A DNA stretch of 64,000 nt from Botryllus schlosseri. Lineage: Eukaryota. A program made the position numbers and the translations under genes. The DNA lies in assembly GCA_051294905.1 (NCBI GenBank), contig CM119384.1, positions 9,486,001 through 9,550,000 of the forward strand, written 5' to 3'. Within the stretch, counting starts at the first letter, position 1. Every line of letters starts with the position of its first letter. A model generated the notes under the pieces. That model made no database searches. It worked only from the letters and a program-made list of their open reading frames with translations, and was not told where the DNA came from. Shown here one piece after another: positions 5,996 to 48,500 of this stretch.

Positions 5996-6329
5996 ATGGC
6001 GCCGGATATGGACTGCATTTCGCCTACACTTTTGAAGGAAGGTTACCTCAAAAAGCCAAAGAAATGGAGCAAGAGATACTTTGTTATTCGCGAAGGGCCG
6101 CCTGCGTGCCTCGAATATTATGACTCACATAAACGTAAAGGCAACGGTAAGCCTAAACGTGTGATACCCCTCGAACATCCCTGGAGTATCCACAAAAAGG
6201 CTTTGTCGAAGCAGAAATACCTCGTAGCCATATACACAGAGACGGAGTATTTCAGCATGGCGGCAGATAATGAAAATGATCAAGCTAATTGGGTGAACGC
6301 ATTGCGCCTGGCAGCGTTGGGAAGTCGAG
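5996..6329 (+). CDS. IRS: Insulin receptor substrate (IRS1/2/4-like), coding exon 1: PH domain
   Basis: MAPDM...LKEGYLKKPKKWSKRYFVIRE...LEYYDS...PKRVIPLE...KYLVAIYTETEYFSMAADNENDQANWVNAL matches the IRS-type PH domain (IRS1 GYLRKPKSMHKRFFVLR...LEYYE...HLVALYT...AADSEAEQDSWYQAL). Phase-1 donor G|GTAAGA at 6330; upstream acceptor TTTTCACAG at 5899-5907. Confidence 0.93.
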
Positions 6330-7529: not shown

Positions 7530-7671
7530 TGTTATGAGTCATTTTTTCCCGTTATTTCTCGCGATCGTTGTTTTCATCGAGATAACGGCCGCTTGTTCTT
7601 TGATATCGGCGAGATCCCGCTCGAGAATTTGTTGACGACCTGCGCGACTTTTCGCGCTGTTATGAGTCATT
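7530..7671. promoter_or_regulatory. Paired identical 14-mers TGTTATGAGTCATT (AP-1-type core) in IRS intron
   Basis: Exact 14-bp copies at 7530-7543 and 7658-7671, each containing ATGAGTCAT, within a CpG-rich intron segment. Confidence 0.3.
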
Positions 7672-7997
7672 ATGGTGGCACTTGAAAAAAATCCTTTATG
7701 AGAGTGGCGATCGTTCGCGGCTGATGTCCGTGTTTGCCGGGTACATTACAAACGTTATGGACTTTAGTGTCGATTTGTAACGTAACTCGTTGTTGTTTGG
7801 CGACATGCCAACGAAACGTTAACGAAGTAATTAGTACTATTGCGTTGATATCGGTCCGACAATAATGGACTGATGCTGCGACGCACGGGCGCCGGCGTGT
7901 TTAGCAGCTGACAACGACAATCCCGTCTCATCCAAGACGCCGCGCGCGCATCGATTAAATCCAAACCGTGACGTCCGATATCGGTAAAGTCGATCGT

Positions 7998-8200
7998 GAT
8001 TATGGCTGGACGCAATGATTCGAGCGCTCGAATCCGAACAATTAATGATTGATGATTCGTGTAGAAAAGTGAGAGACGAATATTTCGAGTACTGATAATG
8101 TATGGTTCTATTCACTAAGAGTTATATTATCCACGCGAATTATAGTTTCGACACTTTCATGGGGAGCCTTGAAACCTCGATTTGTCTAACGCAGCATAAA
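7998..8200. mobile_element. Degenerate left end of the TAGGGCTGGG MITE family
   Basis: Aligns by eye with 27574-27750 (GCAATGATTCGAG.CTCGAATC.GAA...TTTCGAGTACTGA...GAGCCTTGAAACC...CGCAGCAT). Confidence 0.6.
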
Positions 8201-8439
8201 AAACATGTAGTACACGCACGTAAATGGCAACGTTATTCTGTTTATCTTGATCAACCCTCAACGTTGTGAGAAAGTGCTATGAACTAGTTATCATTTACAA
8301 AATACCAAATCGTCTGTACTTGAACTCCATATCATCCATACTTTTTTACATACTAATCAGTGATACTCGAACCCAAAATATTCGTTTCACTCAGGTATTA
8401 TCAATTATCACAGCGTGCTGACCGATTTCCTATTTTCAG

Positions 8440-26553: not shown

Positions 26554-27573
26554 TTATAAGTCAATTGCGGTTAATTGGTACCGCATCTGCCATGTGCAAT
26601 GTGCATTATGTACACATTCGAAGGTTTGTGCTACATGTGTCGAATGAGGATGGCGACAATCGAGCTATCAGGTATGGCACAGTAGGAAAATACCAAAACA
26701 ATGACTGTCGTAGGAACAAAATAACTCTCAGTGGCAAAGGGCGTGTAATTACCGACTTTACGGTAGTTGAACACATCGACTTTCACTACTCGCCTCCAAT
26801 CATGCAAATGCATATAGTCGATATTGATTATAGTAATAGAATCGTTTTGTCTAGCTCATATTCGCTGCATGATCGCCTGTCTAAGTGTCCGTACGACTTA
26901 CATTTCGGAACTGTACCTGGATCGTGAGTTTATGTTCACAATGAACTTCTATCGGTCGGTTCGCGTTATAATTAGGTTGGGTACCACTGTTGCATGGAAC
27001 TTATTTGATATTTTCGACACACACTTTCTAATTCCAAATCATTAATTCACAACATCCCTCCAATTACATACTTTCCTATCATTCGCCCTTTCGCTATCTT
27101 AGATGACAGCCACGAATATCACTAGTAAACCAACGGGTTACGTTTTCATTCCTATAAGAAGAGAGCCTTACTATACTCGCGTCTCCAAGACTCTGCACTC
27201 TGCAGATCATAGTTTCGATCTACTGACAGATATTCATCAATTGGTAACATAATTCAAAATATACTCCATCCCACGTATTCTAAAATATGCGGTGAAATTC
27301 AAAAACTCAAATTACGAAAATAGCCGATATCGGCTCTTTATGCGTATAGGACGCACCCCATCCGCAGATGTCAAACGCATAAATGCGCTTCTTAAAACGC
27401 GAACAATCACGATCAGCGTCGAAGACAGTAACATAATCGCTCTGTAAATATGGAACAGCATAAATAAAAGTTAGCTAGAGAAGTGAATAAGCAAAATTTA
27501 GAAAAAACGCTTCACGACAAAAGAATGTCCAACATGCAGACGTGCACCTCTGCTATAAATACGATACTACGAC

Positions 27574-28065
27574 TAGGGCTGGGCACAATGATTCGAGTAC
27601 TCGAATCTGAATCGAGTATTAATTTTAATGATTCGAGTCGAGTAGTAAAATACGATTTTTCGAGTACTGAAATTATATGCTACTTGCCACTGATAGTTAA
27701 TTTACTAACGAGAGGAAGCCTTGAAACCTTGATTGGCCGTGTCGCAGCATACCAGACATAGTACAAAAGCTACGAACGTTAGGCCTACTGGAAATAACAC
27801 ATTTCCGAAGTCATGGTCATCCCACAATATTGTCAAAAAGTGCAATGAAATGGGTATGGTCGAAAAAATACCAAAGCATCTTTAATGTGACGGATAACAG
27901 CCATTATGTTCTTTGTGGTGGCATAAAAGGTACATATTTGAACTTCGACATAATACATTATGTTGTGACGTCATAATGAGTGATACTCGATTACTCGACT
28001 CGACTCGAAGCTTATTAGGTGATTCAGAATCGAAACACTCAGGTACTCGATTTTGCCCAGCCCTA
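27574..28065. mobile_element. hAT-type MITE, 55 bp downstream of the TTC34-like stop codon
   Basis: TIR TAGGGCTGGGCA / TGCCCAGCCCTA; perfect 8-bp TSD ACTACGAC (27566-27573, 28066-28073). Confidence 0.92.
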
Positions 28066-28119
28066 ACTACGACAGAGGAACTGGCGGACATTGGTATTGC
28101 TAAATTGCGACAGACACTG

Positions 28120-28262
28120 TCATTGCACTACGCAATATCCGATTTCTTTCCTAGCACGCGCACGCAATTTCTTGAGGTCAATGTTGTTGTTGTCGATCAG
28201 TATCCCGTCCTCGCACAGCTGTAAGCATCGCTGCGACAAGATAGCGACATATTTCATAACAG
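28120..28262 (-). CDS. TTC34: TTC34-like terminal exon 20 (CaaX box)
   Basis: Acceptor AATTCTACAG, phase 1; VMKYVAILSQRCLQLCEDGILIDNNNIDLKKLRARARKEIGYCVVQ, then TGA at 28122-28120. Confidence 0.88.
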
Positions 28263-31200
28263 CTGTAGAATTTTCCGTGCGCATTCAAAGTTTATGACTA
28301 TAACCTAGGTGTTCAGTAGCGCAGTACTTCTACTTTTTCGGAATACGCACGCAAGGTTTTGTCGATACTAGCACTATTTACTCATGCAGTGCTTTCACAC
28401 CTGTTTCAGGAGGTGTAAATGAGTCAAATACACCATTTTAAGTGAAGGTCTTTTGCACCACGTAAGGGATAATTAGCATATACCCAGGATTTCACAGGTA
28501 TTTCTCACACGATAAAACAAACCACATCTCATGGGATGTATCTCCGTAAGGATTCGTGCATTCTACTCGCTCTCGTCCATAGGAATGGGTGTGACAGCGA
28601 AAAGTGGTCACAGAAACAGCCGATTGTTCGACTATTTATCTCTCTGTATTATAGTGGAATGTGGTAAACACACCTATTTCGCATCCATGTATTTACAGTC
28701 TGGTAGATTATATACTACAGCAGATTGAAACTCAATCGTTACCTCGAAATCGTGACGGGTAAATTCGTTCAACGCCTGTCTCTGGAACACCCGACTCAAT
28801 GGAGCCAGACCCGGTTTGGCGTGAATAAGCAGAGTCGCTTGCTTGCTGTAGATAGAACGAGCGATTCAAGTATACGGCGCGAACCTCGATAAATTCAGTC
28901 GTGACCCACCAGTTAATCTTCAACGCGCGACTGTAATCGGAGCAAGCTTCCTTGTCCCGATTGTCCATCAAGTGGACATGACCTCTCGCGCAGTAGTCCA
29001 TCGCGCATGCGCCAGCTCCGGCTTCCTTGATAACGGTCGCCATGTCGTCCATGGCTTGCCTGAAAATTGACAGGTTACGTTCTCGGACCGCGGTTTAAGG
29101 CTCGCAACTCTTTGCGTTACGACAGCATGGCAAGATAACACTATACAGATGGCCAGTAATGAAGCACTTCTACTTTTTAAGAGTATTCAAGCATAGGTTT
29201 CGCCTACTTGCGCTATATTTACCCAAGTGGTTGTGTCTTTGAACCAGGGGCGGGCAACCATATTTCGGCCGAAGGGCCACACGAGATTTACGAAGCATTG
29301 CGCGGGCCACTTGAATGCTGATAACCTTTTTAGTTGTCCAATTGGAGCCAACCAGAATAGATAACGTTGAAAACAATACTTATATTACTACGCATCAAAA
29401 TCGATGACAATTTAATCATGGAAACTCTGCGTGCATTCAAGATCTAATCGCACCAACCGCGAAGTTTTTGAAAGTTAATGAATGAATTCGGTCAATAATA
29501 TTGTTACTTGCATATATTGCGGGTCGCCTCTGCATACCGCTGGGCTCATTTGGCAAAGACAGGATTATTTGGCGCTTAGAAATATCAATATCGAAGATTT
29601 CGGCGAAATGTGACTATGACCCTGGGTCGGAACTGATTTTTTCGTCATCAACATCCTAAATTTTATCAACTTTTTGATTCGCCTTGCAAGTTCACAATAA
29701 AGTACCTGGGTACTTTTTTGATATTACAACTAATTTCGAAAATTACCTCGTAGGCCACTTAAAACCGCTGGCCAGGGGTTGGCCGCCCCTCTTTTAGACT
29801 TTTATTGCCACTTTACTGAGCAGTTTGGAAAAACTATTAATTACTTTTATTATATGGATATTGAAAAGTAAGAAGTAGTTTTGGGATAAGTATATGTATT
29901 ACTTTTAGGAATGAAATTGTCACAAGAACTACATGCAATATCCCTTTGGTAACTGAATATATTATTGAATATTCTATCTTTGTGCATAGTGATATCAGTC
30001 ATTTTGCGTTATTTGCGAAGAAGTACCGGCAATTTCAAGAGCAGCCGGCTCTGACTAACCAAATCTACTTTTTAAAACTTACTTGAGTTCTCGTCATATC
30101 TTCATTTTCGACTTCCATTCGAAGTAATTTTGACATGCCATGGAATTCACTGTACTTGTACTATTAATCAGGGTCACGTCAGAGTCAGAGGAAAAGTACC
30201 CGTGCTTGCAGCACTGCATATTTTAGTTGCGTCACCCTTTATTGACATTTTCGCCCACCCCCCGATTTCATCGCGTTCAACTTCGCGACTGTATGTCGAA
30301 TGGTGACTCACTTGTTATTCTTCAACTTCATAAAGCACAACGCTCTCTGTCGCAACTTTTCGAGTCTTTTGTGGTCGCTCGCCACAAGACTTAGTCCAAG
30401 GTACTCGACTGCTTTTCGGAAATCGTCCTCTTCGCACATGATACCAGCGTTCACGTGACACTCCTGCCGGGGAAAAAAAGCGGAATCGTGGCAGAGAGTC
30501 GACAAGACGAATAACGGTTCGATGCCGGAGACCTGACTCCAAAGTCGTTGAAACTAAACTTATTGTATTGACATATTGTATTTGTTTTCCACCTATATTT
30601 TAAGCAGTGTTGAATGCCATAAAGATCCATATACTTCTAGCCTAGTGGAAATTTCGGACATTAAAACCACTAACCACTTGGGAACAGCAATGGGTATTAT
30701 TCGAGCGCTTCTCAGGTATAGCGCAAGCATGCGCATCTGACCTAGAATACGGTGAGGTTATAACTATTGATTAGAGGTGGTCAGTAACGAAGTAATTCGA
30801 CTTGTTCAGAGTACTCAAGGAAGGTTTTGCCAATACTTTCAATACTTAGTTTTAGTGACCATGTTCGTGAACTAATCCAACTGCTCTCAAACCAGCGCTT
30901 ACCCAACCCAGTATATGCCACCCTCGATCAAATGTATTCTTTCAAACTACTTAGTCGATTACTTTTCAAACACGTCATTTTGTACTGCCACTTGAAGTAG
31001 TTTTCACATGTCTTGAAGATCGCTGCTTATATTTCTACTCGAGTGGAGACGTTTGATGCCTAATTTTCCAAAATGCTGATAGTGGACGCACACTACAGTC
31101 AGTCACATAATCTTAATTTTGACTATCAATGTCGGCACGCCAATTCAGCGAGATATAAGACTACATAGCAGAAATATACTGGCTATCCTCAAAACACTCT

Positions 31201-34200
31201 CGAGATAAGTGAACGGGATATCTTGCGGACCAAGTAACAGCCCAAAAAGTGCATGAAAATAGAAGCGGTATGCGATACCTCAGACAGCCTGCGCCGCACG
31301 GTCGAGTCCAGAGACTTCAAAACGTACAGGAGCAAAACCCAGTCGACATCGACCAAGGAGCTGAGCAAGCCGGCCGAATCCTCGTACCGATTCTGCTTCG
31401 CGCATATCAGCCCCGCCCTCGCCACGGCGGTGACGTCATTCGGCGACAACTCCATCACGATTTCCAGATGACGCAAGCCTTCCTCAAACTCACCTGCGCA
31501 AAGTTAATTGAACTATTAAATAACCTAAGTTAATTACCGAGATGATCACAGTAACGAAGTATGCCTCTACTTTGTCAGCGTGCTCAAGATGTTCTACTTA
31601 TACAGCTTACTCAAGTCGCTATGTTTATAGAATACTTCCAATTCTACGGGACAATTTGTTAGGGCGGAACTGGCTACTTTCCCCACTTTTCGTTTTGGAC
31701 ATGGGCGATCAGTAGTGAAGTATTTCTATCTTGTCGGCGTACTCAAGTAAGTTTTACCCATGTAAGTTAAAAAGTAAGTGTTCTAGAGCTATAGTTTCGG
31801 CTGAAAAGTCGGGATCTGTTATGTAGAATTGTCTAAAATCACACAAATTGATTTTAGACAATTCTGCACAACAGTTTCCGAGTTTTTAGACGAAATTATA
31901 GCTCTAAAAAACTTACTTTTTTACTTACATAGTAGTATAGCAAAAGTATTTCGTATCTGGCGACCGCTTCCTTCGTTTGGATAGAAATTTACGTTACAAA
32001 ATAATTTCAACTTCTACTTAGGTAGCAATGCCGACCACCAGAGGTGGTCAAAGTAGTCACCGTCGTTACTCAAGTAGAAGTAGAAGTAACGGCGGAATTT
32101 CTACTCAAGTAGAAGTAGGAGTGGTGGTTCACAAGTAAGTAAGTAAGTAGGTATTCTACGCTTATTTTTGCCTACAAAACTGAAAACTGTCAAGTAGAAG
32201 TAGAAGTAGTCTGAAATCATAACTACTTAAAAAGTAGTGTGAGTAGGAAAAATCTACTTCAAGTACTTCAAAAAGTAGAAGTACTTCGTTACTGACCACC
32301 TCTGCCGACCACTCTGAAGACATCTGGGTAATAATACAGAATCCTCGCACAGCCCCGATGCAACATCTCGCTTACCTTTCAATATAAATATATCGGCGTA
32401 CATCCCGTGCCGCAAAGGGTTGCCGGGGTCGACCGCGATCAGCAACTTGCCGATCATTTGCGCACGCAGCAACCGTTCGGTCCTCTCGACGCCGCCGATC
32501 ACGTCGTCGCACGAGAGAGAAGTCTGCGTGCTGAACGTGGCACCCGACATGCTGCTGCCGTGGCTGGACGAAGCCGTGCTGTCGAGCTCTTCGGAGCCTT
32601 GACGAAATTCTCTCAGGGACGGCTTTACTTTACGAGGCCCCGCCGAGGATCTGGAAAAAACGCGGGGGTCGGTGTTAGTGTAAACAGAGGTGGTCAGTAA
32701 CGGAGTGCTCAAGTTGGTCTCTTTGCATTACTTATCAAAGGAGGTCAGAGTATTCATATTTCGTACTCAAATAGAAGTAGAACTAACGAAACAAATATCT
32801 ACTGAAGTGCACGTAAAAGTAGCGATTTTCAGATAAGTAAAAATGAAAGTATTCTACTGTCTCATGAACCCAGGAAGAGTATGGCCGCCAGGCCTTCATA
32901 TTCCGACCCCGGGTATGCGGCCCGTAATTCAAGGCCGTTCTCTCCAGGCACAAGTATGGTGGCGATAAGGGTAAGCGGCCACAGACGCCCCCTTTTCAAA
33001 GCCTACTTGTGGCAGCCGCATGCACCTTCAGCTGAGACGGAAAAAGAAAGGGAAAATGCGAGCAACCGCGACGGAGAATCTGTGTCCCATGACACAGAGG
33101 ACCCAATATGGGGGGAGGTTTTCTGCGGTTCCTCCGGGCCCCTTAAAAAAAAGTATTCTAGGTCTTAGTTTTGTCTAAAAAAACTGAAAGCTGGTAATTA
33201 GAAGTAGAAGTAATCTACATTTATAACCAGTTGAGTTAGTTGTGCTAGTAGGCAAAACATATTCGAGAAATCCAAAAAATTAGAGCTACTTCCATACTGG
33301 CCGCATATACTTAACAGTATAACATAGCAAACTCCTTACTTTTCGCATTATGGAGTTTGTACGGTATAAAGTAGTTTGGAATGTTTTCCGTTGTGAGTGA
33401 AATTGTCATGCCAAGTGGATGGAATATAGCGCTTGCGTCACGGTAACTGAATTTAATTTTGTAAATCCGCCAGTTTGTAGTGTCATTTATCATTTTGCAT
33501 CAGTCACGAAAACGCATCCTTCAATTACAGAGATGTCACCTTTAATTAGCTGCCAGAATCGACGACCCCTCAACCAAATCAAGTCTTTAAAACTATTTCT
33601 CTAATTCTTTACATACCTCCGTATTCTACTTCAATTTGAGCAGTTTGGACGTGTCTCGGATATCAATACTTCTACTTGTGTTTATATTCACGAGGTTCTT
33701 TTTACTTCTACTTGAGTACCAACGATAACTGGTTTGATTGTCTCTAGTGGTAAAGAGCGTTTCGCGTTGTTTTAACATACTTGTGAAAACCGCGCCGTTT
33801 TCGTTTCATCGTGTTCTCGGACGTGGATGAAAAGGACGTTGTGTTCCTGCTATGATTGGAATAGGAACTGAACACGCTCATAGCTTCCATGCTCGTGTTT
33901 TCGCTTTTAGTGGGACTAGATGCTGCGTTCTGCGGCGAGCTTCCGTCAAAAGGCGATGCCGCATCGCTCTATATAGATAGAGAAGTATATGTTCATTTCT
34001 GTAACGTTCTACAACTGTATTTTGAACCGACCGATTCCGGGCGGTCACGCGCGGCGTAGAACTTCATATCTGCGGACGAGGTCGAGACGTCCGAATACGG
34101 AGACGCCGCTTCTGGAGAAACCGGAGTCGTTTCCGAAGACGAGTCGGATGACGGCGAAGGGGTATGGCCGAAAAGCTTCGCGGTTTCCACGGTGATGCTG

Positions 34201-37200
34201 GATTGTAAAACGAGATTTTTTTAACCGAAATTGTTGTATCCGACAAAGGAGATAAAATCACTATCAGTGGGGTACCAAGAGGGGAAGATCTTGAAATTAT
34301 GGGGTGTGGCGATGTGACGTCATAATCGCTTATTTCGTCACCCCGCAACTGTGACGAGACTTGGTCGTCGCCCATTTCCGCCTCATCCAAATTTTGATAC
34401 TGATTGCGTCCAGGGGTGGTCAGTAAATCTTGTGAAGTAGAAAATGGTTGTATTGCATCACCTTTACGAGCGAAATTGTCATACCAACTGGGAAAAACAG
34501 CCCATGTACGACGTAACACGGTAACTGAATTTATTTCGAAAATTGCACCAATTTATAGTTGCGTTAATCATTTTGTGTTACACGCGAAGATTAACCCTCT
34601 AATTTCACCACCGATTAACTGCTAAAAGTATACGAACCCGCGACCAAATCTACTTTTTATAACTATGCACCTATTTGAGTACTTTCCAGGGCCGTATTTT
34701 CTATTCCCGCTAGAAGTTTTGACGTGTCTATAAATCTACACGTCTACTTGTACTTGAGTAACAACGTTGACATCTTTGACCAATGACCACCTCTTGTCGC
34801 ATGGGTTTGTAGCAGGGATATCTAAAACTCCGGTTTGTAGATTCGTCCCGCCTGGAGCCTACTCATTCAGTATACGTGAACATCGCCGTGGAAACGCGGC
34901 ACCGTCGATTACGTCATCGCATACCTTATCGAAGACTCCCTTCTCCCATTCAGCATCAATCCATCTCTCGAGCCGTACGCCAGTAACAGAGAAAGTACAT
35001 GCTGATCTGCCCGCGAAAAAGCAAACATTAAACATCATTTCACAAGCCGCAGCAGTTCAGGCGCAGTGACTAACCCAACCAATGAAGCAGGATTCGCTTT
35101 GCATCCTGCGGCAGCATGCCGATATGCGCTGTCACTGTGGGCGTGGCAACTCCGCAGGCTTGCACAATATCATTGACACACCCGTGTTCGTCACCAAGGG
35201 CTAATCTCATGAAGGCCCTTCCGCATAGCGCGTCTACACTTACAGGGTTGACCTGATAAAAACGGATGATTGATACCGTTCTGGAATCGTACCTAACGAT
35301 GTAGATTTACCTCCAGCGCGGAGGTGAAATCGCGGATAGCGTTGCCTTGATCGCCCAGATGAGCGTGGCATTCAGCTCGGGCCAAATACGATTTGCATAG
35401 ACCGTGTGAAAATAGGACTTCTGAAAAGATAATAAATTTCACAATCTTAGACAACGATGAGAGCACTTGGTAGCTAAAGTATTAGGTCTTCGTAAGTACA
35501 CAAGCTGACGCAGACGTAATTCTGTGAATTTCCACTTACTACAAGTAGAAATGAAGATTGCCAAGATCTGTCAAAAGTTTTGACTTCTTGACTCAAAATT
35601 ACTGCAAGCGGAAGTAGAAAATCAAAGATTCGAAAACTACGCAAGAGAGTATTCAAAACGTAGAGACGGGTACTTTCCAAATTGCGAAATCCACATTTGC
35701 GACAATGTCGCTTATACAAATAGGCGCTATTTTCGTATAGTCAGTTTCCGTGATACAGGGGATATATATGACCCGATTACTATACAGAGGGGCTTCTTAA
35801 AGTATGGGTCGCGACCGCCCCAAAGCGATTGCTAAATTTCTTGCAACAAAAAATACTTCGCGCATGGTTTGTACGTACAAGGTCACTGTGTTGGGAAAAC
35901 TATATAGACAATAAGCAACAGAAAATTGATTACTACAGTGGCTTGATCATGAAAATGTGCCGACCTTTATATTACACAAATTGGTTTGATGTCTTGATAA
36001 GATTTGTCTGACATTGGTATCTCTGGAAAGGTCAAAGTTGCGCAGATAACACTCGGTCAGGGTAGAAGTATAGGGAAAGGGTGGAGGTAACTGTCGCATC
36101 CGATAATTTTTTTTAATACGTATAATTTATATACATGAATCAACTTTATTGGCAATTGTGAAATAGCGGTATATTCCTACTGTCGCTTAACGCCGCCCGA
36201 TACAGTTGCGGTGATTTAGTCAAGGGGTGTGTAACAGTATTTCGAGGCCGCATTTTCCGCTCGCGTCGGATCAAACGAAGACATGAAATTTTTGCCTACA
36301 GGTGGATGGGTTACATTATGCGGTGCCAAAATACTCGGATAAATGCGATAACACCTTGACCCATATTGGTGTGTTCGGTATTAGAAATGGTCGACACCAA
36401 ATAGGTCGACCTTGCAATCTGAGCCCCGCAGTACAAATGTGGCCCGCATAGGAAAATAATGCACCCCATTTTGAAATCGCGTGCGTCACACATGTTTCAT
36501 AGAACCACATTGCGTACATCTGGTTGTCTGCGCCTTCTCTATTTCATACATGCCCGACGCCCGTAAATAGGTAGCATACTGACATTAAAAATGCATTCAT
36601 GTCGATGTGTGAGGCTTCGGTCGCGAGATGGAATAAAACTCAGATTTGGGTTGTGGTTAAAAATGTTTAGGAACCACTGTTATGCAGTTTTACTCATAAC
36701 AGTGACACAAACTTATCCAAAACTACTTTCTACTTTTCGAAATCAGCGGTGGTCAAAGTAGTCATTGTTGGTACTGAAGTAACGTCGTTAATTTCTACTC
36801 CAATACAGGTAGAAGTAGCAATTTACAAGTAAGTGTTATAAGCCTAGTTTTGCCGACAAACGGAAAACTGTTACGCGTGGAATTTTAAGCCACAAAAGCA
36901 TTCACATTTATCGGGGATTTACGCGGATTTCTGAATAGGAATTACATTCAATCCTATTTTGCATCAACAACCTTCGCCAGCTGTTGGGCGGAAATCCTTT
37001 GTCGTGTACAGCAACTCGACAATTTGCGCGTTGACTTTATCTATAACTATATGCGTATCGCGGTGCTGCACGCCACAGGCTATTACGGTCCGTAATCGGA
37101 AAGCGGTATCAAAATATTTTGTACCCACGCGGCGAGAGATTCCGAGAAGCGGCGCACAGTTGCTGTGCCGCAGTTTCGGAAGCGAATTTACATAGCATTT

Positions 37201-40200
37201 ACATACGAAAGCGCGCGAGGTAACGTAAATATTGTGGAGATACGACCGATCCTGGCGATTTCGCTTGGCAGCAATTATTTGAACTCTTTGCGGCGGACGT
37301 AAACTTGAATTTTAAAACGAAAAATTGTCTCGTACGTTGATTGCCGCGAGTTGATGACTAACGAAATATTTATATTTTTACTCTATCTGCTGCTTCTACT
37401 CTTTGAAGTATTCGAGTAAATATCCTTTAAATAACTTCCACCTAAGTGTTTTGACTAGGGTTGCATTTAAAACAAATGGTTGTTTAAAACACTTTGTTTA
37501 AAACATTAAACAGTGCTTTTTAAGTTGTATAATTATGCCATAATTGCGTAAATACTTTCCAAAAAACATGTTGTATGAGCCTACGGACGACTACCACCCT
37601 TTATATAGCCGACGCATACGATATGGGATGGTGTGAACCCTCAAAATAGTCGGTTCAACAACTATATAAGTACGTAAATATTTCGTCAAAGGAGCTTTGT
37701 TTACCCTATATTGTCCATGGTCAATGTCAATCAACTATGACGTCACAATTGAATATTAAGAAATGACGCGCAGCCGCGACAGCCGGAGCGTGAAGGTCCT
37801 GTGGAAATTTCAATGAATTGCTGCTCCATTACGGTGGCGTTCTGAAGAAAATGGCTGCGGCCAATTTGTTTTTCGTTCTGCCCTTCAATTTGAGACCACA
37901 TCAGTTTTAGAGCGCAGTGCCCCTTCAAATTGAAGGTAAAGTAGGCCTACTCTAGAATAATGGAACCACTTGAGTAGGTTATGCATATAATTATAGTGTT
38001 GAGTACTTCAAAAAGTAAAAGTACTTCGTTACTGCCCAGTGACCACCTCAGACCATTAATGTACAAACGGCCGGACCGAGCGCCTAAATTATGATCGTAA
38101 GGAATTCGTTACAGATGTTACATGTTTCGAATATATTCAGTTTCGAATTCGAGAAACATCACATACAAGAGCACCGATCCACATTGATTGTTAATGATGT
38201 CGTAAACCGTTGTCACCTGAGGAATTGGTGGGCCCCGCCAGACAGCATAGAACGGCTATCGTGAAGCAATGGATCGCCCTTCGCACGGAGCCGTCGTCTC
38301 GCTTCGTTCGAAGCATTGTGACGGCATAGCCGTGGATGGAAGAATACAAGAACGTCCGCTGCGAGGGCGGTATCTCTTGCAGAAAGTTAGAAACCATTTC
38401 CTCGCCGCCGACTTGCACCACCTTCAAGAGCAATGCGAATAGGCTGTTATCCGCGTCAAAGGGATGGGCAGATGTGGTCAAAGTAGTTAACTTAGGTCCC
38501 GTACTCAAGTAGATGTAATGCAGGAAAATTCTGCTCAATTACAACTAGAAGTAGCGATGTCCAAGACATGTCAAATCATAGTGAAGTAGAAATAGAAATG
38601 AAGGTCTGAAAATATCTCTCAAGTAAGTATTTTTACACATTTTTAGCAGTGAGTCGGAGGCGGCTACATATTAAATTGCAGGATGCATGCACGTTGTACC
38701 TAATGATTTATGATACTTCAAACAGGTGCAATCTGCGGCAATGCATCCAGTCACAGTGATGCATGGTTTATTTCACCCAGTTTATACCATAGTTTCACCT
38801 ATAAAAGTATTGCACACTTATCGCAAAACTACCTTCTATTTTTCATAATTCATAGCATGAAAAGTAAGTAATTTCGCCTCCAAATGTTAAAACTGGCAGC
38901 GGACACCGAAAAACATAGCAACTAGGGTGAATAGTGCAAGTGTGCAAAATCTACTTAAGTACTCCGAAAAGGTACAATTACTTCGACACAGACCACCTCT
39001 GGAGATGGATTTATCTGAGCGTCGATTGTGTGCATATTTTAACTATAGTCACAAGTCACAACGCTGAAGAATAGATACTTCAACTTAGCGATGTAAGTTT
39101 AGTAAACTAGTGTTCATTTATTTCATCACAATATTTTCCTGCGAATGACAACGCCAATCGTTGGTTCCTGCGATTGTCGCTATAGCAGCATAGTTTACCA
39201 TGACTTATTTTCTGAAGCCCGCAAGGCTATAGGAAAATCTCTATACCTAGTCTATACCTTGGTCAAGTATGCAATCCCTGTCTCCGCATCTTTCATCAAA
39301 ATCAACAACAATCCGAGATGCAGCTTTACGATATGATTGTCGGAATTCTGCAAGGACAGTAATAAACGAACTTACGTTACACAGCCCTACACTATTCAAA
39401 TCGCGATTGAGAGAGATGTCCTCTAACCTCTGGATTGTTGTCAAGCAGTCTTTTCAGGGTGACCTCGGCGTCATCGTAGCTACCAATGTAATAGAACGCA
39501 TGTGCTTTGAGAATATGCGCGGCTCGGTCCTTACTGTTGAGCTTGGTCAGTAATTGACTGATGGAGAGAGCCATTGAACCTGCGTTTGTGTCCGGGCTGG
39601 CGTTGCCTGAGAGATTTAAAAGAAAATCCCGTTTACTGACATTTCACACACGAAAGTAATTGCCCCAAACGAATTTATACTTTTCAAAATTTTAAGTTGA
39701 ATAGTATATTCATATTGAAATGAACCCGAATATTTTCGGCTGACACTCGTCAGGGGTAATCGTCAGCAACTAGTAGAGAATTGGAAATAACATTGTATAT
39801 CAACAATCGTGACGTCATATTTTGCGATACGATTGTTGATATACAATGTTCTTTCCAATTCTCTACTAGTTGCTGACGATTACCCCTGACGAGTGTCAGC
39901 CGAAAATATTCGGGTTCATTTCAATATGAATATACTATTAAATTGTATATTGAAGTTCTGTACCTCCAAGAAGCTCTTAAAATCTTAAATGCAAAAAGTA
40001 AGCAGTTTTGTGTCAAAGCAGCGGTAATAGTCAAAATAACACTGGTTCGCAGTGGTTCTCTCTCTCTCAGTGGTGCCGGTCCGTAGCAAGTTTACTGCTG
40101 GTCCGCCAAATATATTTGAATTTATATCTCAATTCCAAACTGCACGAAGTTGAACCCTTACCTAATAATTCGACAAACAAAAGATTCCATTTTATGTTTA

Positions 40201-42542
40201 TGTGGAAGTGCGGAACGTATTTTTCTGTTATGTGGTGTCGTAGTAGAAAGTTTATGGGCTCATTGTCCGAATGTAACGAAGTTTCTTTAAAAGTCTTCGT
40301 CGATTTCGCACATAACTTGTCCGAAACGTACGCTCTATTTTTAAGCAGTCTCGTACAACACTTGCACTATTGTGGCGCGCGTCCAAAGTAGATGCAATTA
40401 GGCGACGCTCGGCACTTTGTAGAGGTCGACCGATATTGATTTTGCAGGCCGATATCGATTATCGACACACTCACAAGGTCGATAACCGATACCATAGGCC
40501 GATATTAATATGGAAGGAGCAAAGAACTATTTCGCCAAAAATATTATATATTAGGCAAGATGGCACTTGTACATGACACAGAAAGCTGAAAAACAAACGA
40601 GAAAACTAAAATTAAAAAGAATTATTGCTTAATTGTGGACATTGATTGAAATTTGGGATAACCCAAAAAGCAAAACATGATACAGAATTGCAGATCGGTT
40701 CAGTAGAGGTAGATTGTGATGCAAGAAGCATATTTTCTCTCGATGCTCACCCAGTAATACTCGTCCTTCAAGGGTATATATGTCACGCATTGCCATTTGT
40801 GTCGTCGATTTCTTCAGATTGAGAACACGTAGCATTAAATTTCTAATATTTTCGAATTTTTTGATATATGAAATATTGGCCTTCATAGGCCCCATATATC
40901 GATAATCGGGAAAGTTCCAAATATCGGCCTCGATAATCGGATAAGTCGACAATCGGTCGACCGCTTCTCGGCAGTATAATAGAGGCTACAGCAAACAGCA
41001 AAGTCGTAATTCATTCAAAGGATACCGCATAAACATATTCAAGTTACTGGTCTTTGACAGAACTTAGCGAGCTTCGCCTTGCAGAAATTTCAATACCGTC
41101 ACGTATAAATATCTAATATCAAAAACGCAACAGTAAATGAAGCTTCTAATATTATATTTGAGTTGCATGCAGGTATCGTATTTAAATTTAGGGTCAATGG
41201 TGATTTTTTGACGGTTCGCAGGTACGCCACATTTGTTTTGAAGTTTTGCCGGTCCGCGAGGTCAAAAAGGTTGAGAAACACTGGTCTAAAACATAACCAC
41301 TTAGGTCAGTACTGCAGGTGGGAAAAATGAGCTTGAGTACTCTGAAAAAGTCCAAGTTGCAATCCTCATAGAGTGCATAGAGTGCAATCCCGTGGTGATT
41401 GATTTTCTGACGTCAAACCACCGCGTAAAGTACCGGATTGATCGGGTACATTCCGTGCGGTGCACTCACCCGTGGGATGTTGAGCGTATTGCAAGAGTTT
41501 CTTGGCTCGGTCGTATAGCATCTGTCGAATTCTCGTCCTTTGCGCGATTGGGAGTTTGTTCATGTAGATGCTGACTGTCCTTTGATTGGATCTGCACGCC
41601 GCCTGACAAATACAATCAGATGTTTCTCGATATTTATTTACATCATTTCATTTGCTATCATCCAATATGCATGTAACGCTTCAGAGAAAATCTTAACAGC
41701 ACAGATGCCACTCTATAGAACCGCACCGCAATAATCGAAGGTATTAAGCATCTGCTTGCCGTTCTAATGCGCCCGGGCACAGCCTTAGCATCAGCAAGAA
41801 TGAATACACGTTTCGGTGACGATGTGACGTAACAAACGACGTTATGATCGCTGGAATCAAGATTTACGAGGCGCAAATATGCATTGATTTAGCTTACTGC
41901 TACTCTTGGTGCAGTCCGAGACGCAAATTTATTGGTTTTTTATCCGTTGATGTTTTCAAAAGACTCTACAGCTGTCGCGATTGCTCCTATTCCTATAATC
42001 TCGAGAAAACCTTATCAATTAGCAATGACCCCCAATGAATGAGAAATCGATATGGTGGTTTTGTTTGGGTGCAGTGATTGATTGGTGTGATCGGTTTCTA
42101 ATCTGTCCTTATTATTTCTCACTTTTGTACCTCCATTCGATCCGTAGCTAATAAATCTACAGCATTGGAATGAAGCGACTCCGCCACAATACCTCCAAGT
42201 CGATGAGAAGAGCATCGATGTCTTCGTTTTCCAAATGAACGAGAGCGCGCTCGAACAACAGAGTCGGGTCCTTCGGCGAGTGGCGCAGAAGATTGTCGTA
42301 ATCTTTCCTGGCTTCGTTCTGGAAGACATTTGAAAATTCAGAATCATTTTGTTCTGGAATATGTGGCCGTTGAGTGAATTGAAATGCGCGCGACTCGTTC
42401 ATGCGCTTCTGTGTCAGGGGGCATATGACACAATGTGGTTAATTAGAGCCAATAACTATTTTGCCGAGTCATTATCGCACTTAACATCTATAATCTTATA
42501 AGTCTACACTGTTCCAATTAAAACAAAACAAATATATATGTC

Positions 42543-42578
<36 letters not shown>

Positions 42579-45500
42579 ATAGAGAGTCTATATTTTTCAT
42601 CTAACCGAAATACATAAACAGACAGCAATAATGGTGTACAGAAAATACGCATGCAAAGTATTCGGTATCAGATAGGAATGATCGAAACGACGTTGGAGGT
42701 CAACTAGTCTGATCACACCCGCATCTATCAGGGATGCAATTGTCTGAACACAGTCTCGCTATAATATCCACAAATCCATGCAGATTGCCGACCCATGCCT
42801 ACGAGAACGTGAGGAGTAGGAGTATTAGTGATCGGTTCATAGGATTAGTCGAATTTGGAAAATGTGACAGAATACATAAGTAAATCGCACAAACAGTTGC
42901 GACTCCAGTCCTAAACCTTGGTGGAAATGTTGAAAAGCTGTGCTGACTGAATTACTCCTGCTGGACTATACGTATAAGTTCTATAGTTGACATGTGTCAC
43001 ATTTTAGTATTGGCAGAACATATTGGTTTTATCAGCAGAATTATTATGTATAGGCTTAAGATTCTGATATCCGACCAATTGTCTTAATAATCACCCTACC
43101 TTTTTCCCGGTTTCCCGATAGCAAGCCGCTCTCGCCGACAAGATCACGCTGTCCTGCGCGTAATCCTTCCGCGACAGCAAGTGGTCGTAGATTTTGATCG
43201 CGAAATTATGCCTCCCGATCTTCGAATAGCAGGCGGCCAGTTTCAGCAACGTGTCCCGGTGCCTGGGCTTCACCACCAAGATCGCGCGGTAGTAATCGAT
43301 CACTTGGTGCACGTTAGAGTTCAACCTCATGTTTGACGTAGACTTTTCGGGAGAGTTCAATCTGGAAGAAATCTTGTCCAAGGTCGACACCACGTCGTTC
43401 AGCTCCGCAGAACTGGAGTTCAGTATCTCGCGTGCGATTCTCCCAACATGCTGCACTTCGTAATTATCTTCCAGGAAAGTCTTTGTTATGTCATACTCCG
43501 GCTGTTGTTCGCTTCTCTTCGCGTTGGCTTTGTTAATCGCTTCAACCAAGGAATCGATTGGCAAGTTCAAACCGCGGGTAATGTTGCTGATTGCAATGTC
43601 TGTCTGTGGCTTCAGCACGTAGCAATAGCCGAGCCGGATCCAACATTCGGCAAGCTTTCTGGTGTCGGCGCTGACTTCGTGGTATAAAACCCGGATGGAT
43701 TCGTTCAGTGTGGCGATTGCTTGATCCAGTTTGTTCCAGGTTGTTAGCCTCTCGACGTAAGTCATTTGAAGCTGGAAGTCTGTGGTGTCCATCGCTAACA
43801 GCAGTCTGGCAAAGTATGTACGACATCAGCTGCGGAGCAAATGCCCTGTTTTTCTCGATACTTGTTACAGAACTACCAAAGCTGAACTGTCCAATGATAC
43901 CTACTAGAATAGTAAAAGGTACACGGGGATTTGAAGATCGCGGAAGCAATACTTGAATATCACTGATCATTATACTGAAGATGACAACTTCCACTGAGCG
44001 ACATGATCAATTGCGCATAATTGTGTAAAACTCACGATTGCTGTCTCCGGAACTTACCGTCTTGTTATGAAATTTGATCGTATGTAGGATTTTACTTTGG
44101 TCCGATTACCCACAGTAATATGGGCGTAGTAGGGACAAATTCGGGAGGGGCTAACAACATTATAATTATATGACGTCACAGACGCAACTAACAAATAATA
44201 AACATACCATTAGAAAAATACTTGGGGTTAGGACAATTATACCTACCCCAGCATGCGTTCGGCCTGAATTATTCTCAATATCGGAACTTTGAGAGTAACA
44301 CATTCATAATTCGACCTCCGTTGACAACAAATACATATTCTGTCTCAACCCAGTGATTAAACAAGCGGTTTGGATACGTTAATTTATCCGTAATTCGACG
44401 AGGAAAAACACCCTTACTTGCAGCAATCTGTTGTTAGCTTCAGCCATTTTTCACTTTTTCTATTTTCGCTTCCGATCGGCTTCGAGTGCACAAAAGCCCG
44501 TAGCAGTTCAGTAATTTGCGGGTAATGGGCGCCGTGCTTATTCCGTAAAACCTGCTCATTGCGCACATGTCAATCAAACAATTCTAAAGTATTTCAAAAT
44601 CCCCGAAGGTCCGTAGCTAAAATCAACAGTATTGGGCCATTGGCGAAGAAAGGAAACATCATACGGTAACGATCATATATATGCGTTGAATATAAAATTT
44701 TGAGGGGGGAGGAATTGCAGCTATACGATGCCGTCAATGATACGTAATTAACGAAATCAAAAAGTAACGTCAGATAGTGTTAAAAGTCAAAGCTTAGAAG
44801 ACAAGAGAGCTCTGGTGTGGGCGGTTTAATTTTGCATAGGATTTAATATTAAGTATGACATATATTGATGTGTGCAGAAAGATATTTGTGGCAATAGATA
44901 TTTAACACACAAATATTTTCCTGTCATCCTACAATTGGATCAACACCCATTCAAACGTTTTGATATTTTCAATACATAAGATACAACCACTCGTGTCTTA
45001 TTTGTAACCGGATAGGACATTCGATCCATAATCACTGATATAAACTTCCTTTTACATTCAAAAATTTGTAACAGGCATTGTCTGGGCTTTGTGGAGACGG
45101 AGTCGTGAATACGGTACTGTACACGGACAGAAAACGACATGGGCGGTGCACGACGGGATCCTATCAACAAATCGCAAGTACAATGGGCTGCCTAGTAACC
45201 GGTGACTGGAGGCAAGGGCTATGGTGTTTGAGTCAAGACTATACTGAGAACTGAACCCGGAAAAAAATTACATGAGGGCATCCCCTGACTTCACCGATAA
45301 TAATTGCAATCACTTCTCTGTGATACTACCATACATTAAAAATATTATTGTTCTTCCCATCCGTTAAGATGGCGAATTAAACAATCTTATATCATAGGGA
45401 TGGTGTGAACCTCGGAAAGGTTCAGGTTCGTGTGAACGCGAACCTTTTTGAAAGGTTCTGTGTGAACGCGAACGTGAACATCATGACGTCACGTGACGTC

Positions 45501-48500
45501 ATTTTGCTAATTCCAACCCTACATTTCAGTGAAGTGATAGCCTTTATGAATGTACACAGTAGGGCTCTTCAAAAATGACTTTTATTCTCAAATCGTACTG
45601 GCTACTTGATAAAATTGTTAGGTTACCTAATTTAAGCCTACACACAAAATTTGGTTCAATTCCAGCCAGTAACCGCTTTGCTACAGGAGTATAAAGTTTC
45701 TATTTATTATATAAAAATAAATATTAGAAAATTTGAAAATTTTCTGTTCACCCCATGAAAGTGTTAGGCTGTCTATAGAAACGATGCTCACCAAATTTGG
45801 TTCAATTCCAACCGTGGAAGCGGAGTTATTGCCGTCGAAAAATCTGGATTTGAATAAAATAGTATTTACGGTGACCGATTCTTTGTTTCTTTATTATAGC
45901 TGTGCTCACCGTAAATACTATTTTATTCAAATCCAAATTTTTCGACGGCAATAAGTTCATATTGACGATTTAAACGTCGCCAAATGTATCAACTGGGGCA
46001 ACCAAATGATATATTAATCCCATAAAATCAATATCTTCCGTCGCTCTGCCAACAATTCCGACGGGGACTTGCAAGGGAATATAAGCTTACGCCTAAACGG
46101 TCTAGGCCAGACCGGACAATGTATTCGTGGTCTGAGTATTGCTACGTGGATATTGAACAGAGTGTAAAACGGTTTCTATACTTGCTACCGATAGTGCCCC
46201 ATTAACAAGTTATGCAGCAGTAGCCAACACCCCAATCGCACGGATTTGGTTTTTATGATACAATAAATGTATGAAGTCAAGATTGACCCCGCACGCCTGC
46301 TAGATTTTTACACCAGGCAACGATATCAATTTTATTGATTGGTTGAATAAACAACATTCGCTGACTACCTTGTACCTACATGTAGTATAGTTCGCTCTTG
46401 ATGTTTGTGATTGCGGGTCAAGCTCACGGCAGAGAGTCACTAAATATTCACAACGGAAAGCTTGATATTTCGAGCAAACGTTTGTAACAAAACAAGTAAA
46501 TTTTTTGAGATTGTCAAGGTGCATGCTTGTTTAGTGTTGATTTTTTATACTGTCAGCGCCATGCATAGAGTGGCCACAATTGAAATGCAGTAAATTTCAA
46601 CCAAAGATGTTATAATTAAGTGAAAATTGTAATATATGAAAAAGGTTCACAGTGCAGAACTTACCAAGGTTCGTTTGTGAACGTGAACCTCTAAATTTCA
46701 GAGGTTCACACACAGAACGCGAACGTGAACCTCACGCTCACACCATCCCTAAATCAAGTGTAAATCAGACCATTATGGCGAAATATTGATAGAGAACAAT
46801 ATTTGAACTTCAACGGCAGAAATAATGACTCGAAAGTCAAGAACGATACCGGTAAACCCTGCTGCAGCGATGCAAATCAAAGACGACATCTACTACAGAA
46901 TATCAAATACCTGTTCTTGGCCTTCTGTTAGCGTTGTCAGTTAATATAAATTTATAACATGTTACGCTTTTGATAAACAGCCATTATTATTTGTGAGACG
47001 CATCTCTGCAGCATGCTAGGTTTGAAAGTGATTATTCACCTGAACCGCTCCCTCCTTGTCTTTGGCGAAAGCGCGGAGGCAGTCCGACACGGCCTGCTTA
47101 TTGAAGCCGTCCATGAGCGTGTACGCGATGGCCCTTTGGATCAGAATAGAGGCCGCATCGTTTCCCAAGTGGTCAATGATGGCCGAGCATACATCTACCA
47201 CCTGTTACATGTCGTATGCATTTTATTATGAAAGTAGGCTATGCCTGTTTGACATGGGGCGGAATTTTACCTGTTTGTACCTCTTTTCTTTCATTTGGCT
47301 TTCGATTTGTGCGATACACGTATCGACTACTCCGGGGTCCAGTGTGAAGATAAATTTCCATATTTCGTTGGCGACGTTTTTCACTCCGGGACATCTCCTC
47401 CTGGAAATATCATCCATTTCGGTGAGATTTGGTTTAGCAATGAAATGTCACGAAAATTGCTAGTGAACGATGGTACTGTATTTCTCAAAATGCAAATTTA
47501 CGGGAAGAGGACATAATTGGTACCCATAAGGGTATAATGCAGTTCAACGCGATCCAGATAAGATGTCTGGCATTCAGAAAAATCAGAAAAATCACTAGAC
47601 ACAAAACCGGACTCGTTACCACAGGGAGCGACTGTCCTACGCCAAACTGGTCTACACGATTTTTGCGCCAGGACTTCTTTGGGTCAATGTAACAAAATTT
47701 GGGGGCGCTGAGTACGACTATGACGTTTTTTTGGCTCCATCACGTCACGTTTTGTCACTTTCAGTAATTCTCAGAAATTTCATCTCATCTTCCACTTGAA
47801 GTAGTTTTGACATGTCTTAGAAATGACTGACTATACTTCTACTTATAATTGAGTAGAAATGTAAGGCGTTACTTGTGCTACTTGAGTAGCATCGCTGATC
47901 ACTTCGACCGACTCTAGTTTATAGTAAAATATTACGGCAAATCTGAAACCACCAAAAATGTAAAGCGTTTTGTATTTAGAACTGGTGTTTAATCATGCAA
48001 AACATCAACAAAAAGTCTCGATAATAAGCAATGCTAATCTCTGGCTCTGTTCCAGCATAGAACACGTGATATATGGTGTAGGCTACAGAATGTCCTATGT
48101 GGAGAGGGATCGACTGTCCAAGAACCGATGCATATTTATTTCTATTGTGAACTGTGAAGTAACACGAACTTCTGGTTTCCTGTTGAGCTGTTAGTAAGCA
48201 GTCTCCATTCATCTGGTTGTCTATAATAGACAATGAGAAAGAAGCCCTTCATATCATGGCAACAAATCGAAGGAAAATAGTTCAGAAACAGCCTTCCTCG
48301 ATTCCGATAAAATGTGACAATATATGGAAAATGGAGAAGAAGAATTAGCATGATAAGTACAGGTGGAGTTTAATGATGACAAATTCTTTCAAGTTATCAT
48401 GATAAGCACTTTTTTCTTTGGGAAAGCAGACATCCTGTTTCGTTTAATGTTTCAAGACAAGCTTAAAGGGTCGCATATTCGGGTCATGTGCCAGGGTGAA

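What the first reader, a model, noticed from the sequence alone, without database searches (positions are those of the whole stretch)
28120..28180. TTC34-like protein ends in polybasic + CaaX (LKKLRARARKEIGY-CVVQ): a predicted farnesylated TPR scaffold
CVVQ is a canonical farnesyltransferase motif (X=Q), and six K/R residues just upstream give the K-Ras4B-like second membrane signal. TTC34 is a poorly characterised gene associated with motile-ciliated cells, and I know of no report that it is prenylated. Farnesylated ciliary cargos such as INPP5E reach cilia via PDE6D, where a large hydrophobic residue at -1 favours tight binding; here -1 is Tyr. Human TTC34, as I recall, also ends C-x-x-Q. 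Hypothesis: TTC34 is a lipid-anchored, PDE6D/ARL3-trafficked ciliary TPR adaptor.
Basis: partly seen in the sequence, partly recalled or inferred. Interest (0 to 1): 0.7.

Follow-up and report, generated by a model that had tools for sequence, protein, structure and literature searches.

The report
Conserved farnesylation motif on tunicate TTC34
The last exon of a large TPR-repeat gene, the sea-squirt counterpart of the uncharacterised vertebrate gene TTC34, is transcribed and ends in a basic helix plus a Cys-x-x-Gln lipid-attachment motif kept in all nine relatives found, so the protein is probably farnesylated and membrane-tethered, but a ciliary role remains speculation.

Summary
The minus-strand ORF 28120-28284 ends ...LKKLRARARKEIGYCVVQ followed by a stop. 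A spliced transcript contig joins this exon in frame, through GT-AG introns, to five upstream exons.

The gene runs from 50468 to 28120 on the minus strand, is single copy, and is colinear with Styela clava LOC120328794.

All nine orthologous C-termini recovered keep Cys at -4 and a terminal Gln. These include Ciona, Clavelina, Styela and four unnamed contigs. The boxes are CVVQ, CTIQ, CILQ, CIVQ (twice), CVIQ, CLIQ, CHIQ and CRIQ. Position a1 varies freely, a2 is always I, V or L, and KLRAR is invariant. One sequence has a 2-residue insertion, yet its Cys is still at -4.

The "TTC34-like" label holds. A pLDDT-94 model of the C-terminal domain matches mouse, human and Xenopus TTC34 end to end (TM 0.81-0.84, 28-32% identity). 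The next hits reach only TM 0.34.

Three caveats remain:
- The basic stretch is the last TPR helix, not a floppy K-Ras tail.
- I could not read the last four residues of vertebrate TTC34.
- The PDE6D high-affinity signature (Ile at -1, Ser at -3) is not conserved, and nothing here ties the gene to cilia.

My verdict is a new, well-supported predicted CaaX protein. It is a new member of a known kind and moderately interesting.

The parts
28123..28134 (-). CaaX box Cys-Val-Val-Gln (Cys 28134-28132, Gln 28125-28123), the predicted farnesylation site
   Evidence: Read directly from the sequence. Cys and Gln are invariant in 9 of 9 orthologues.
28120..28122 (-). TGA stop codon directly after the CaaX box
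28135..28176 (-). Polybasic segment LKKLRARARKEIGY (6 K/R), which forms the C-terminal capping helix of the last TPR module. KLRAR is invariant in the family.
   Evidence: In the AF2 model of the Styela orthologue the equivalent residues 254-269 are helical, with pLDDT about 89-95.
28123..28230 (-). Coding part of the last exon (36 codons), following an AG acceptor at 28232-28231
   Evidence: Spliced RNA contig X1 record 2, frame, GT-AG check, and tblastn to Styela residues 1261-1297.
28037..28119 (-). The part of the 3' UTR seen in the transcript contig. It runs into a high-copy inverted-repeat element at 28065.
   Evidence: (piece 28037-28230 and the depth table).
28743..28845 (-). Penultimate coding exon
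28910..29059 (-). Coding exon containing a TPR repeat
   Evidence: The joint 29058>30311 is seen in runs X1, X3 and X12.
30312..30463 (-). Coding exon
   Evidence: The joint 30462>31278 is seen in runs X1 and X3.
31279..31493 (-). Coding exon, the most conserved block of the C-terminal TPR domain
   Evidence: (56-67% identity to tunicate orthologues).
32376..32646 (-). Coding exon covering the end of the Ser/Thr-rich linker and the start of the C-terminal TPR domain. Its 5' limit was not determined.
28037..50468 (-). The whole TTC34-like gene, with colinear homology to Styela clava LOC120328794 residues 4-1297. The likely start codon is at 50468-50466.
   Evidence: tblastn tiling, TPR Pfam hits on the exons, the start region read, and single copy in the genome.

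Best explanation
The window carries the single-copy tunicate orthologue of TTC34. It is a TPR-solenoid protein of about 1,300 residues with a long disordered Ser/Thr-rich insert. Its mRNA ends with an exon encoding the last TPR capping helix, which is strongly basic with an invariant KLRAR, followed immediately by CVVQ and a stop.

The most likely mechanism has four steps:
1. Protein farnesyltransferase farnesylates the Cys.
2. A CaaX protease removes -VVQ.
3. ICMT methylates the new C-terminus.
4. The farnesyl group, together with the adjacent basic helix face, tethers the C-terminal end of the TPR scaffold to an acidic membrane leaflet, or hands it to a prenyl-binding chaperone. The rest of the TPR array then recruits partners at that membrane.

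Shown here:
- The sequence, its transcription and its splicing.
- Orthology with TTC34.
- Family-wide conservation of the Cys at -4, an aliphatic a2 and a terminal Gln.
- Presence of prenyltransferase-beta, ICMT and PDE6D genes in the genome.

Inferred, not shown: the lipid modification itself, the processing steps, membrane binding and which membrane is targeted.
For: - Sequence and frame.
- Spliced transcript using the exon. Canonical introns.
- Nine orthologous C-termini with invariant Cys(-4) and Gln, a2 restricted to I/V/L, and a1 free (V, T, I, I, V, L, H, I, R).
- P0163 has a 2-residue insertion before the Cys yet keeps it at -4 from the end. Selection therefore acts on distance to the C-terminus, which is the hallmark of a CaaX box.
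- Stop codons directly after Gln in two independent genomic loci.
- Background frequency of Cys at -4 among unrelated TPR hits is about 2%.
- FTase rules: Q at X is positive, a2 I/L/M/V is favourable, and only D/E/K/R at a2 or K/P/R at X are restrictive (PMC10320760).
- In the AF2 model the last four residues are the only disordered, exposed part (pLDDT 44) after a confident helix.
- Genome content: three prenyltransferase-beta loci, ICMT and PDE6D exons.
Against: - There is no biochemical evidence of lipidation.
- The Cys sits directly after a confidently predicted helix. Classical substrates and predictors such as PrePS expect roughly 10 flexible residues upstream, so access to the FTase active site would require the helix end to fray.
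- The exact conservation of KLRAR suggests a structural or protein-binding role rather than simple charge.
- An Rce1-type protease was not detected by the exon-wise Pfam scan. That is a weak negative.
- A Styela isoform (X2, P0154) ends before this exon, so not every product need carry the motif.
- Expression is low: depth is 5-15 in the contigs, and there are no reads on the coding exons in the sampled bulk RNA-seq run X23.
Confidence: 0.7

Rival explanations
1. The conserved C-terminal Cys and Gln serve a purpose other than lipidation. They could be a C-terminal peptide ligand for a partner domain, or a redox or metal contact with the other invariant Cys about 27 residues upstream. On this view the protein is not prenylated, because the motif abuts a rigid helix.
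For: The basic stretch is a confident helix ending at -1. A second invariant Cys lies in the preceding helix (column 6). KLRAR is conserved residue for residue, which is unlike typical polybasic membrane signals.
Against: The conservation pattern is exactly what FTase recognition predicts and is not expected for a peptide ligand or a metal site: a1 is free, a2 is only I/V/L, X is only Q, and the Cys stays fixed relative to the C-terminus across an indel. The tail is modelled as disordered and is not packed against the upstream Cys. A cytosolic TPR protein is unlikely to use a disulfide.
Confidence: 0.15
2. The farnesylated protein would be a high-affinity PDE6D cargo, released by ARL3 inside cilia, making TTC34 a lipid-anchored ciliary TPR adaptor.
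For: The genome has a PDE6D orthologue (C2, about 23.608 Mb). The window protein has an aromatic residue at -1, and a hydrophobic -1 side chain (Ile in INPP5E) sits in a hydrophobic PDE6D pocket and raises affinity (PMC5512577). Farnesyl plus a polybasic stretch is compatible with PDE6D binding in general (established knowledge for K-Ras4B).
Against: The -1 residue is not conserved: it is Y in the window but S, K, K, K, K, G, R, K in the eight orthologues. Position -3 is I, L, K or E, never the Ser that INPP5E uses. No paper in the library ties TTC34 to cilia, FOXJ1 or PDE6D cargo lists. No strict X-box was found in the window (a weak negative). Homologues were found only in tunicates and vertebrates, unlike core ciliary genes.
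Confidence: 0.1
3. The motif is a chance ORF ending or an annotation artefact: the stretch is not the real last exon, or the Cys is there by accident.
For: About 2% of proteins have Cys at -4 by chance. The mechanical ORF start at 28284 is not the real exon boundary.
Against: A spliced transcript reads in frame through the exon to the stop. The exon is homologous to the last 37 residues of named orthologues. The motif is conserved 9 of 9.
Confidence: 0.02

Closest known systems
Vertebrate TTC34 (UniProt A8MYJ7 human, Q8C0Q3 mouse, Q5PPS5 Xenopus laevis)
   Same: The C-terminal 273-residue TPR domain superposes end to end at TM 0.81-0.84 and 28-32% identity, far above every other TPR protein (next best TM 0.34 at 15% identity). 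The alignments reach the last residue on both sides. The nearest language-model clusters are named TTC34.
   Different: The tunicate proteins are about 1,300 residues against 554-566 for the Swiss-Prot entries. They also carry a long Ser/Thr-rich disordered insert. Sequence searches with tunicate queries did not retrieve any vertebrate protein. I could not read whether vertebrate TTC34 ends in C-x-x-Q.
Farnesylated CaaX proteins with X = Gln (yeast Ydj1 CASQ, human DNAJA2 CAHQ; from general knowledge also Rap2A CNIQ, PRL-1/2 CCIQ/CCVQ, CENP-F CKVQ, PDE6A CCIQ)
   Same: Cys at -4, an uncharged a2 and a terminal Gln. This class is taken by FTase and not by GGTase-I.
   Different: Here a1 and a2 are mostly aliphatic, so full processing (cleavage and methylation) is expected, unlike the 'shunted' Ydj1/DNAJA2 type. 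The carrier is a giant TPR scaffold rather than a GTPase, chaperone or phosphatase.
K-Ras4B polybasic-farnesyl membrane signal
   Same: Six K/R residues within 14 residues upstream of a farnesylatable Cys, with no nearby second Cys for palmitoylation.
   Different: The basic residues are predicted to lie on a structured TPR capping helix. They are conserved as an exact KLRAR motif rather than as a disordered, compositionally defined lysine run.
INPP5E-type high-affinity PDE6D ciliary cargo
   Same: A predicted C-terminal farnesyl-Cys, and in this species a bulky hydrophobic residue at -1.
   Different: The defining Ile(-1)/Ser(-3) pair is absent and is not conserved in the family. There is no evidence of ciliary localisation.

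Membership tests
CaaX farnesyltransferase substrates | Cys exactly four residues from the C-terminus of the translated, spliced product | tested here: met
   Found in 9 of 9 orthologues, with stops verified.
CaaX farnesyltransferase substrates | a2 is not D/E/K/R (preferably I/L/V/M), and X belongs to the FTase class (not K/P/R, and not the L/F class taken by GGTase-I) | tested here: met
   a2 is V, I, L, V, I, I, I, V, I and X is Q throughout. The rules come from PMC10320760 and PMC11152559.
CaaX farnesyltransferase substrates | Accessible, flexible C-terminal segment upstream of the Cys | tested here: inconclusive
   In the AF2 model only the last 4 residues are disordered (pLDDT 44). Residues -1 to -16 form a confident helix.
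CaaX farnesyltransferase substrates | Covalent farnesyl thioether demonstrated on the Cys | not testable with these tools
   This needs metabolic labelling or mass spectrometry.
CaaX farnesyltransferase substrates | Modifying and processing enzymes encoded in the same genome | tested here: met
   Three prenyltransferase-beta loci and ICMT. An Rce1-like protease was not detected exon-wise, which is not evidence of absence.
TTC34 family | Specific similarity of the C-terminal TPR domain to reviewed TTC34 entries, clearly above generic TPR proteins | tested here: met
   TM 0.81-0.84 and 28-32% identity, against TM 0.34 or less and 15% for the next hits. Supported as a lead.
TTC34 family | Orthology of the N-terminal half, or conserved synteny with vertebrate TTC34 | not tested
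   No vertebrate sequence or locus could be retrieved. The exhaustive HMMER search with the 233-residue exon gave only tunicate-type hits.
   Only co-terminal structural alignment is seen. The residues themselves are not shown.
K-Ras4B-type polybasic plus farnesyl signal | A cluster of at least 6 basic residues immediately upstream of the farnesyl-Cys | tested here: met
   KKLRARARK in the window, with 6-7 basic residues in all orthologues.
K-Ras4B-type polybasic plus farnesyl signal | The basic region is an intrinsically disordered hypervariable tail | tested here: not met
   It is predicted to be the terminal helix of the TPR domain, and its sequence is invariant (KLRAR).
High-affinity PDE6D ciliary cargo (INPP5E type) | A hydrophobic residue at -1 and Ser at -3 relative to the farnesyl-Cys | tested here: not met
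   The window has Tyr at -1 but Ile at -3. Orthologues have S/K/G/R at -1. The rule comes from PMC5512577.
High-affinity PDE6D ciliary cargo (INPP5E type) | PDE6D present in the organism | tested here: met
   PDE6D-type exons at G000:C2:23608051-23609727. The C16 hit is UNC119-like.

The most novel reading that the evidence does not exclude
TTC34 is, throughout chordates and including humans, a farnesylated, membrane-tethered TPR scaffold. Its invariant basic KLRAR helix plus lipid would form a bipartite targeting signal, and in ciliated or germ cells a prenyl-binding chaperone (PDE6D/ARL3) would deliver it to a specialised membrane such as the cilium. That would give the first molecular function for an orphan gene.
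Probability: 0.12. Interest if true: 0.7.

Novelty: new member of a known kind. Interest (0 to 1): 0.45.

Why it matters
TTC34 has no described function. The 96 papers in the library that mention it are association or methylation gene lists, and none links it with prenylation, CaaX motifs or cilia.

A CaaX box conserved across three ascidian orders (Ciona, Clavelina, Styela and this genome), sitting on a domain that matches vertebrate TTC34 end to end, gives a concrete and cheaply testable handle: the protein should be membrane-anchored, sensitive to farnesyltransferase inhibitors, and mislocalised by a Cys-to-Ser change. It would also add a very large TPR scaffold to the short list of non-GTPase farnesylated proteins.

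It does not change any concept. The chemistry and the recognition rules are textbook.

Tried and rejected
**Retrieving vertebrate TTC34 sequences**
- All three homologous-protein searches returned only tunicate proteins and unnamed fragments. The queries were the Ciona C-terminal region, a full-length profile and a C-terminal profile.
- The exhaustive HMMER search with the 233-residue exon gave one full-length hit (Ciona) plus exon-sized ORFs.

**False lead**
- P0116 ends ...KLRARAARERDRAE and looked like a CaaX-less relative. It is a generic repeat-on-repeat TPR protein from metagenomes.

**Structure searches with no specific match**
- afdb_clusters and the ESM-Atlas structure search gave only generic TPR matches at TM 0.35-0.58.

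**Literature supplements**
- The CXXX-screen supplements of PMC10320760 are truncated in storage and contain none of the nine boxes.
- TTC34 is absent from the held supplements of the humanised-yeast CaaX paper and of the PDE6D cargo proteomics paper.

**Other checks**
- A strict X-box (RFX) pattern gave 0 hits in the window against 0.5 expected, which is uninformative.
- A first related-loci run failed because the alignment contained fragment rows. The repeat run found one further species.

**Not attempted**
- Complex prediction with FTase or PDE6D, because the interaction depends on a lipid and on an enzyme active site that the tool does not score.

Full report
**1. The observation**

On the minus strand, the ORF 28120..28284 ends ...NNIDLKKLRARARKEIGYCVVQ followed by TGA. 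The Cys codon is at 28134-28132 and the stop is at 28122-28120. Six of the 14 residues before the Cys are K or R. The text of the finding is therefore correct at the stated coordinates.

**2. Is it a real, expressed last exon?**

I laid four public runs of the same organism on 27000-32800. One contig of run X1 (1085 nt, depth 15) is spliced into six pieces: 28037-28230, 28743-28845, 28910-29058, 30311-30462, 31278-31491 and 32374-32646.
- The joints 29058>30311 and 30462>31278 recur in runs from other studies (X3, X12).
- Concatenated on the minus strand, the pieces give a single open frame of about 340 codons that stops right after CVVQ.
- After sliding the boundaries by 0-2 nt, which leaves the mRNA unchanged, all five introns are GT...AG.

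The last exon therefore starts at 28230, not at the ATG of the mechanical ORF. The contig has no mismatch to the window in that exon.

Expression is low. The sampled bulk RNA-seq run X23 has no reads on the coding exons. Its reads, and the enormous depths at 27572-28065 and 32044-32304, belong to a high-copy repeat (see section 7).

**3. The gene**

TPR Pfam models hit several minus-strand ORFs. An exhaustive HMMER search with the largest exon (233 aa) found one full-length protein, Ciona intestinalis LOC100176663, plus exon-sized ORFs from unnamed assemblies. Word-indexed searches added Clavelina lepadiformis and Styela clava LOC120328794.
- tblastn of the Styela protein tiles the window colinearly from 50468 down to 28123, covering residues 4-1297. 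The only gap is over a Ser/Thr-rich, poorly conserved insert.
- The likely start codon is at 50468.
- A profile of the C-terminal domain finds only this locus in the 495-Mb assembly, so the gene is single copy.

By similarity, the organism is an ascidian closest to Styela among the named hits.

**4. Is it TTC34?**

None of the tunicate entries is named TTC34, and no vertebrate sequence came back from any sequence search. Two other lines of evidence support the label.
- A model of the Styela C-terminal 273 residues, built on a 13-row alignment that includes the window's exons, is very confident: pLDDT 93.7 and pTM 0.83.
- Against AlphaFold models of Swiss-Prot, its three best matches are TTC34 of mouse (Q8C0Q3, residues 280-554 of 554), human (A8MYJ7, 291-566 of 566) and Xenopus (Q5PPS5, 290-562 of 562). 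These score TM 0.81-0.84 at 28-32% identity, while every other TPR protein is at TM 0.46 or less and 11-20% identity.
- The nearest named ESM-Atlas clusters are also "Tetratricopeptide repeat domain 34", at 0.97-0.98. I treat this as a lead only.

I accept "TTC34 orthologue" for the C-terminal domain. The N-terminal half was not tested.

All three structural alignments run to the very last residue on both sides. Vertebrate TTC34 therefore has a tail of the same length after the last helix.

**5. Conservation of the motif**

I recovered nine C-termini. They come from:
- the window;
- Styela clava;
- two Ciona entries;
- Clavelina;
- an unnamed marine metatranscriptome contig (P0163);
- an unnamed Logan transcript contig (P0164);
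- two unnamed genomic contigs, reached by walking along assemblies (L004 and L008).

Aligned, the invariant columns of the last 38 positions are one upstream Cys, K-L-R-A-R, one Glu, the Cys at -4 and the terminal Gln.
- The boxes are CVVQ, CTIQ, CILQ, CIVQ, CVIQ, CLIQ, CHIQ, CIVQ and CRIQ.
- Position a1 takes V, T, I, L, H and R, while a2 is only I, V or L, and X is only Q.
- P0163 has two extra residues before the Cys, yet the Cys is still four from the end. What is conserved is the distance to the C-terminus.
- Stop codons follow Gln directly in both genomic loci.
- Among about 150 unrelated TPR proteins in the hit list, only three have Cys at -4.

This is the pattern expected of a functional CaaX box. 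In the complete CXXX screen of yeast FTase, Q at X is the one positive pattern, and the only strong restrictions are D/E/K/R at a2 and K/P/R at X (PMC10320760). Human FTase also takes CxxQ, and human GGTase-I refuses it (PMC11152559).

The genome encodes three prenyltransferase-beta-type loci and ICMT. An Rce1-type domain was not picked up by the exon-wise scan, which is a weak negative.

**6. Mechanism and its limits**

The best reading is farnesylation of Cys -4, followed by removal of -VVQ, then methylation, then membrane tethering helped by the neighbouring basic surface.

The basic stretch is not a floppy K-Ras4B-like tail. It is the last (capping) helix of the TPR solenoid, and only the four CaaX residues are disordered. 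Two things follow.
- The basic residues would form a fixed positive face next to the lipid. Their residue-for-residue conservation (KLRAR) hints at a structural or partner-binding role as well.
- FTase access may require the helix end to fray, which is the main reason my confidence is 0.7 rather than higher.

A Styela isoform that ends before this exon (P0154) shows that CaaX-less products may exist.

**The ciliary/PDE6D extension**

Fansa et al. (PMC5512577) show that high affinity for PDE6D, and hence exclusive ciliary sorting, depends on Ile at -1 in a hydrophobic pocket and Ser at -3.
- The window has Tyr at -1 but Ile at -3.
- The eight orthologues have S, K, K, K, K, G, R, K at -1, which resembles the low-affinity Rheb type.

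The signature is therefore not a family property. PDE6D itself is present: exons on C2, while the intronless C16 hit is UNC119-like.

I found no literature tying TTC34 to cilia, FOXJ1 or PDE6D cargo. This part remains speculation, at about 0.1.

**7. Seen in passing**

- The stop codon is followed, 55 nt downstream, by a 492-bp element (27574-28065) with 16-nt terminal inverted repeats. Read depth there runs into the thousands, with many loose ends at its borders. It is a MITE-like, high-copy, transcribed repeat inside the 3' UTR.
- A second block of very high read depth lies in the intron at about 32044-32304.
- The plus strand at 5912-10475 encodes a PH domain and an IRS-type PTB domain followed by a long disordered tail, so it is an insulin-receptor-substrate-like gene.
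- An RNase H remnant lies at 18073-18405.

**8. Verdict**

It is a new member of a known kind, namely CaaX proteins. Its value is to give an orphan chordate gene a first testable biochemical property.

Noticed in passing
window 27574-28065: A 492-bp MITE-like element with 16-nt terminal inverted repeats (TAGGGCTGGGCACAAT / ATTTTGCCCAGCCCTA). It lies 55 nt downstream of the TTC34-like stop codon, inside the 3' UTR. RNA-run depth is in the thousands, with many loose ends at 27572-27574 and 28065, so it is a very high-copy, transcribed repeat family.
   Followed up: partly
window 32044-32304: A second block of very high read depth with sharp loose ends at 32270 and 32304, inside the intron between exons 31279-31493 and 32376-32646. 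It is probably another interspersed repeat.
   Followed up: no
window 5912-6346 and 8415-10475 (+): Plus-strand exons encode a PH domain and an IRS-type PTB domain, followed by about 550 residues of Ser/Pro-rich disordered sequence with Tyr motifs. This is an insulin-receptor-substrate-like adaptor gene, convergent with the TTC34-like gene.
   Followed up: partly
window 16927-18405 (-): ORFs with an RNase H match and retrotransposon-like C-terminal sequence, probably a decayed retroelement fragment.
   Followed up: no
P0154 (Styela clava LOC120328794 isoform X2): An annotated isoform ends at ...ALKIDS, before the last two exons, and so lacks the basic helix and the CaaX box. A non-lipidated variant may exist.
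   Followed up: no
L011 (G000:C16:22062480-22065950), ORF 1486-2172 (-): An intronless 228-aa ORF carries a full GMP_PDE_delta domain and looks like UNC119, the myristoyl-binding chaperone, rather than PDE6D. The multi-exon PDE6D-like gene is on C2.
   Followed up: partly
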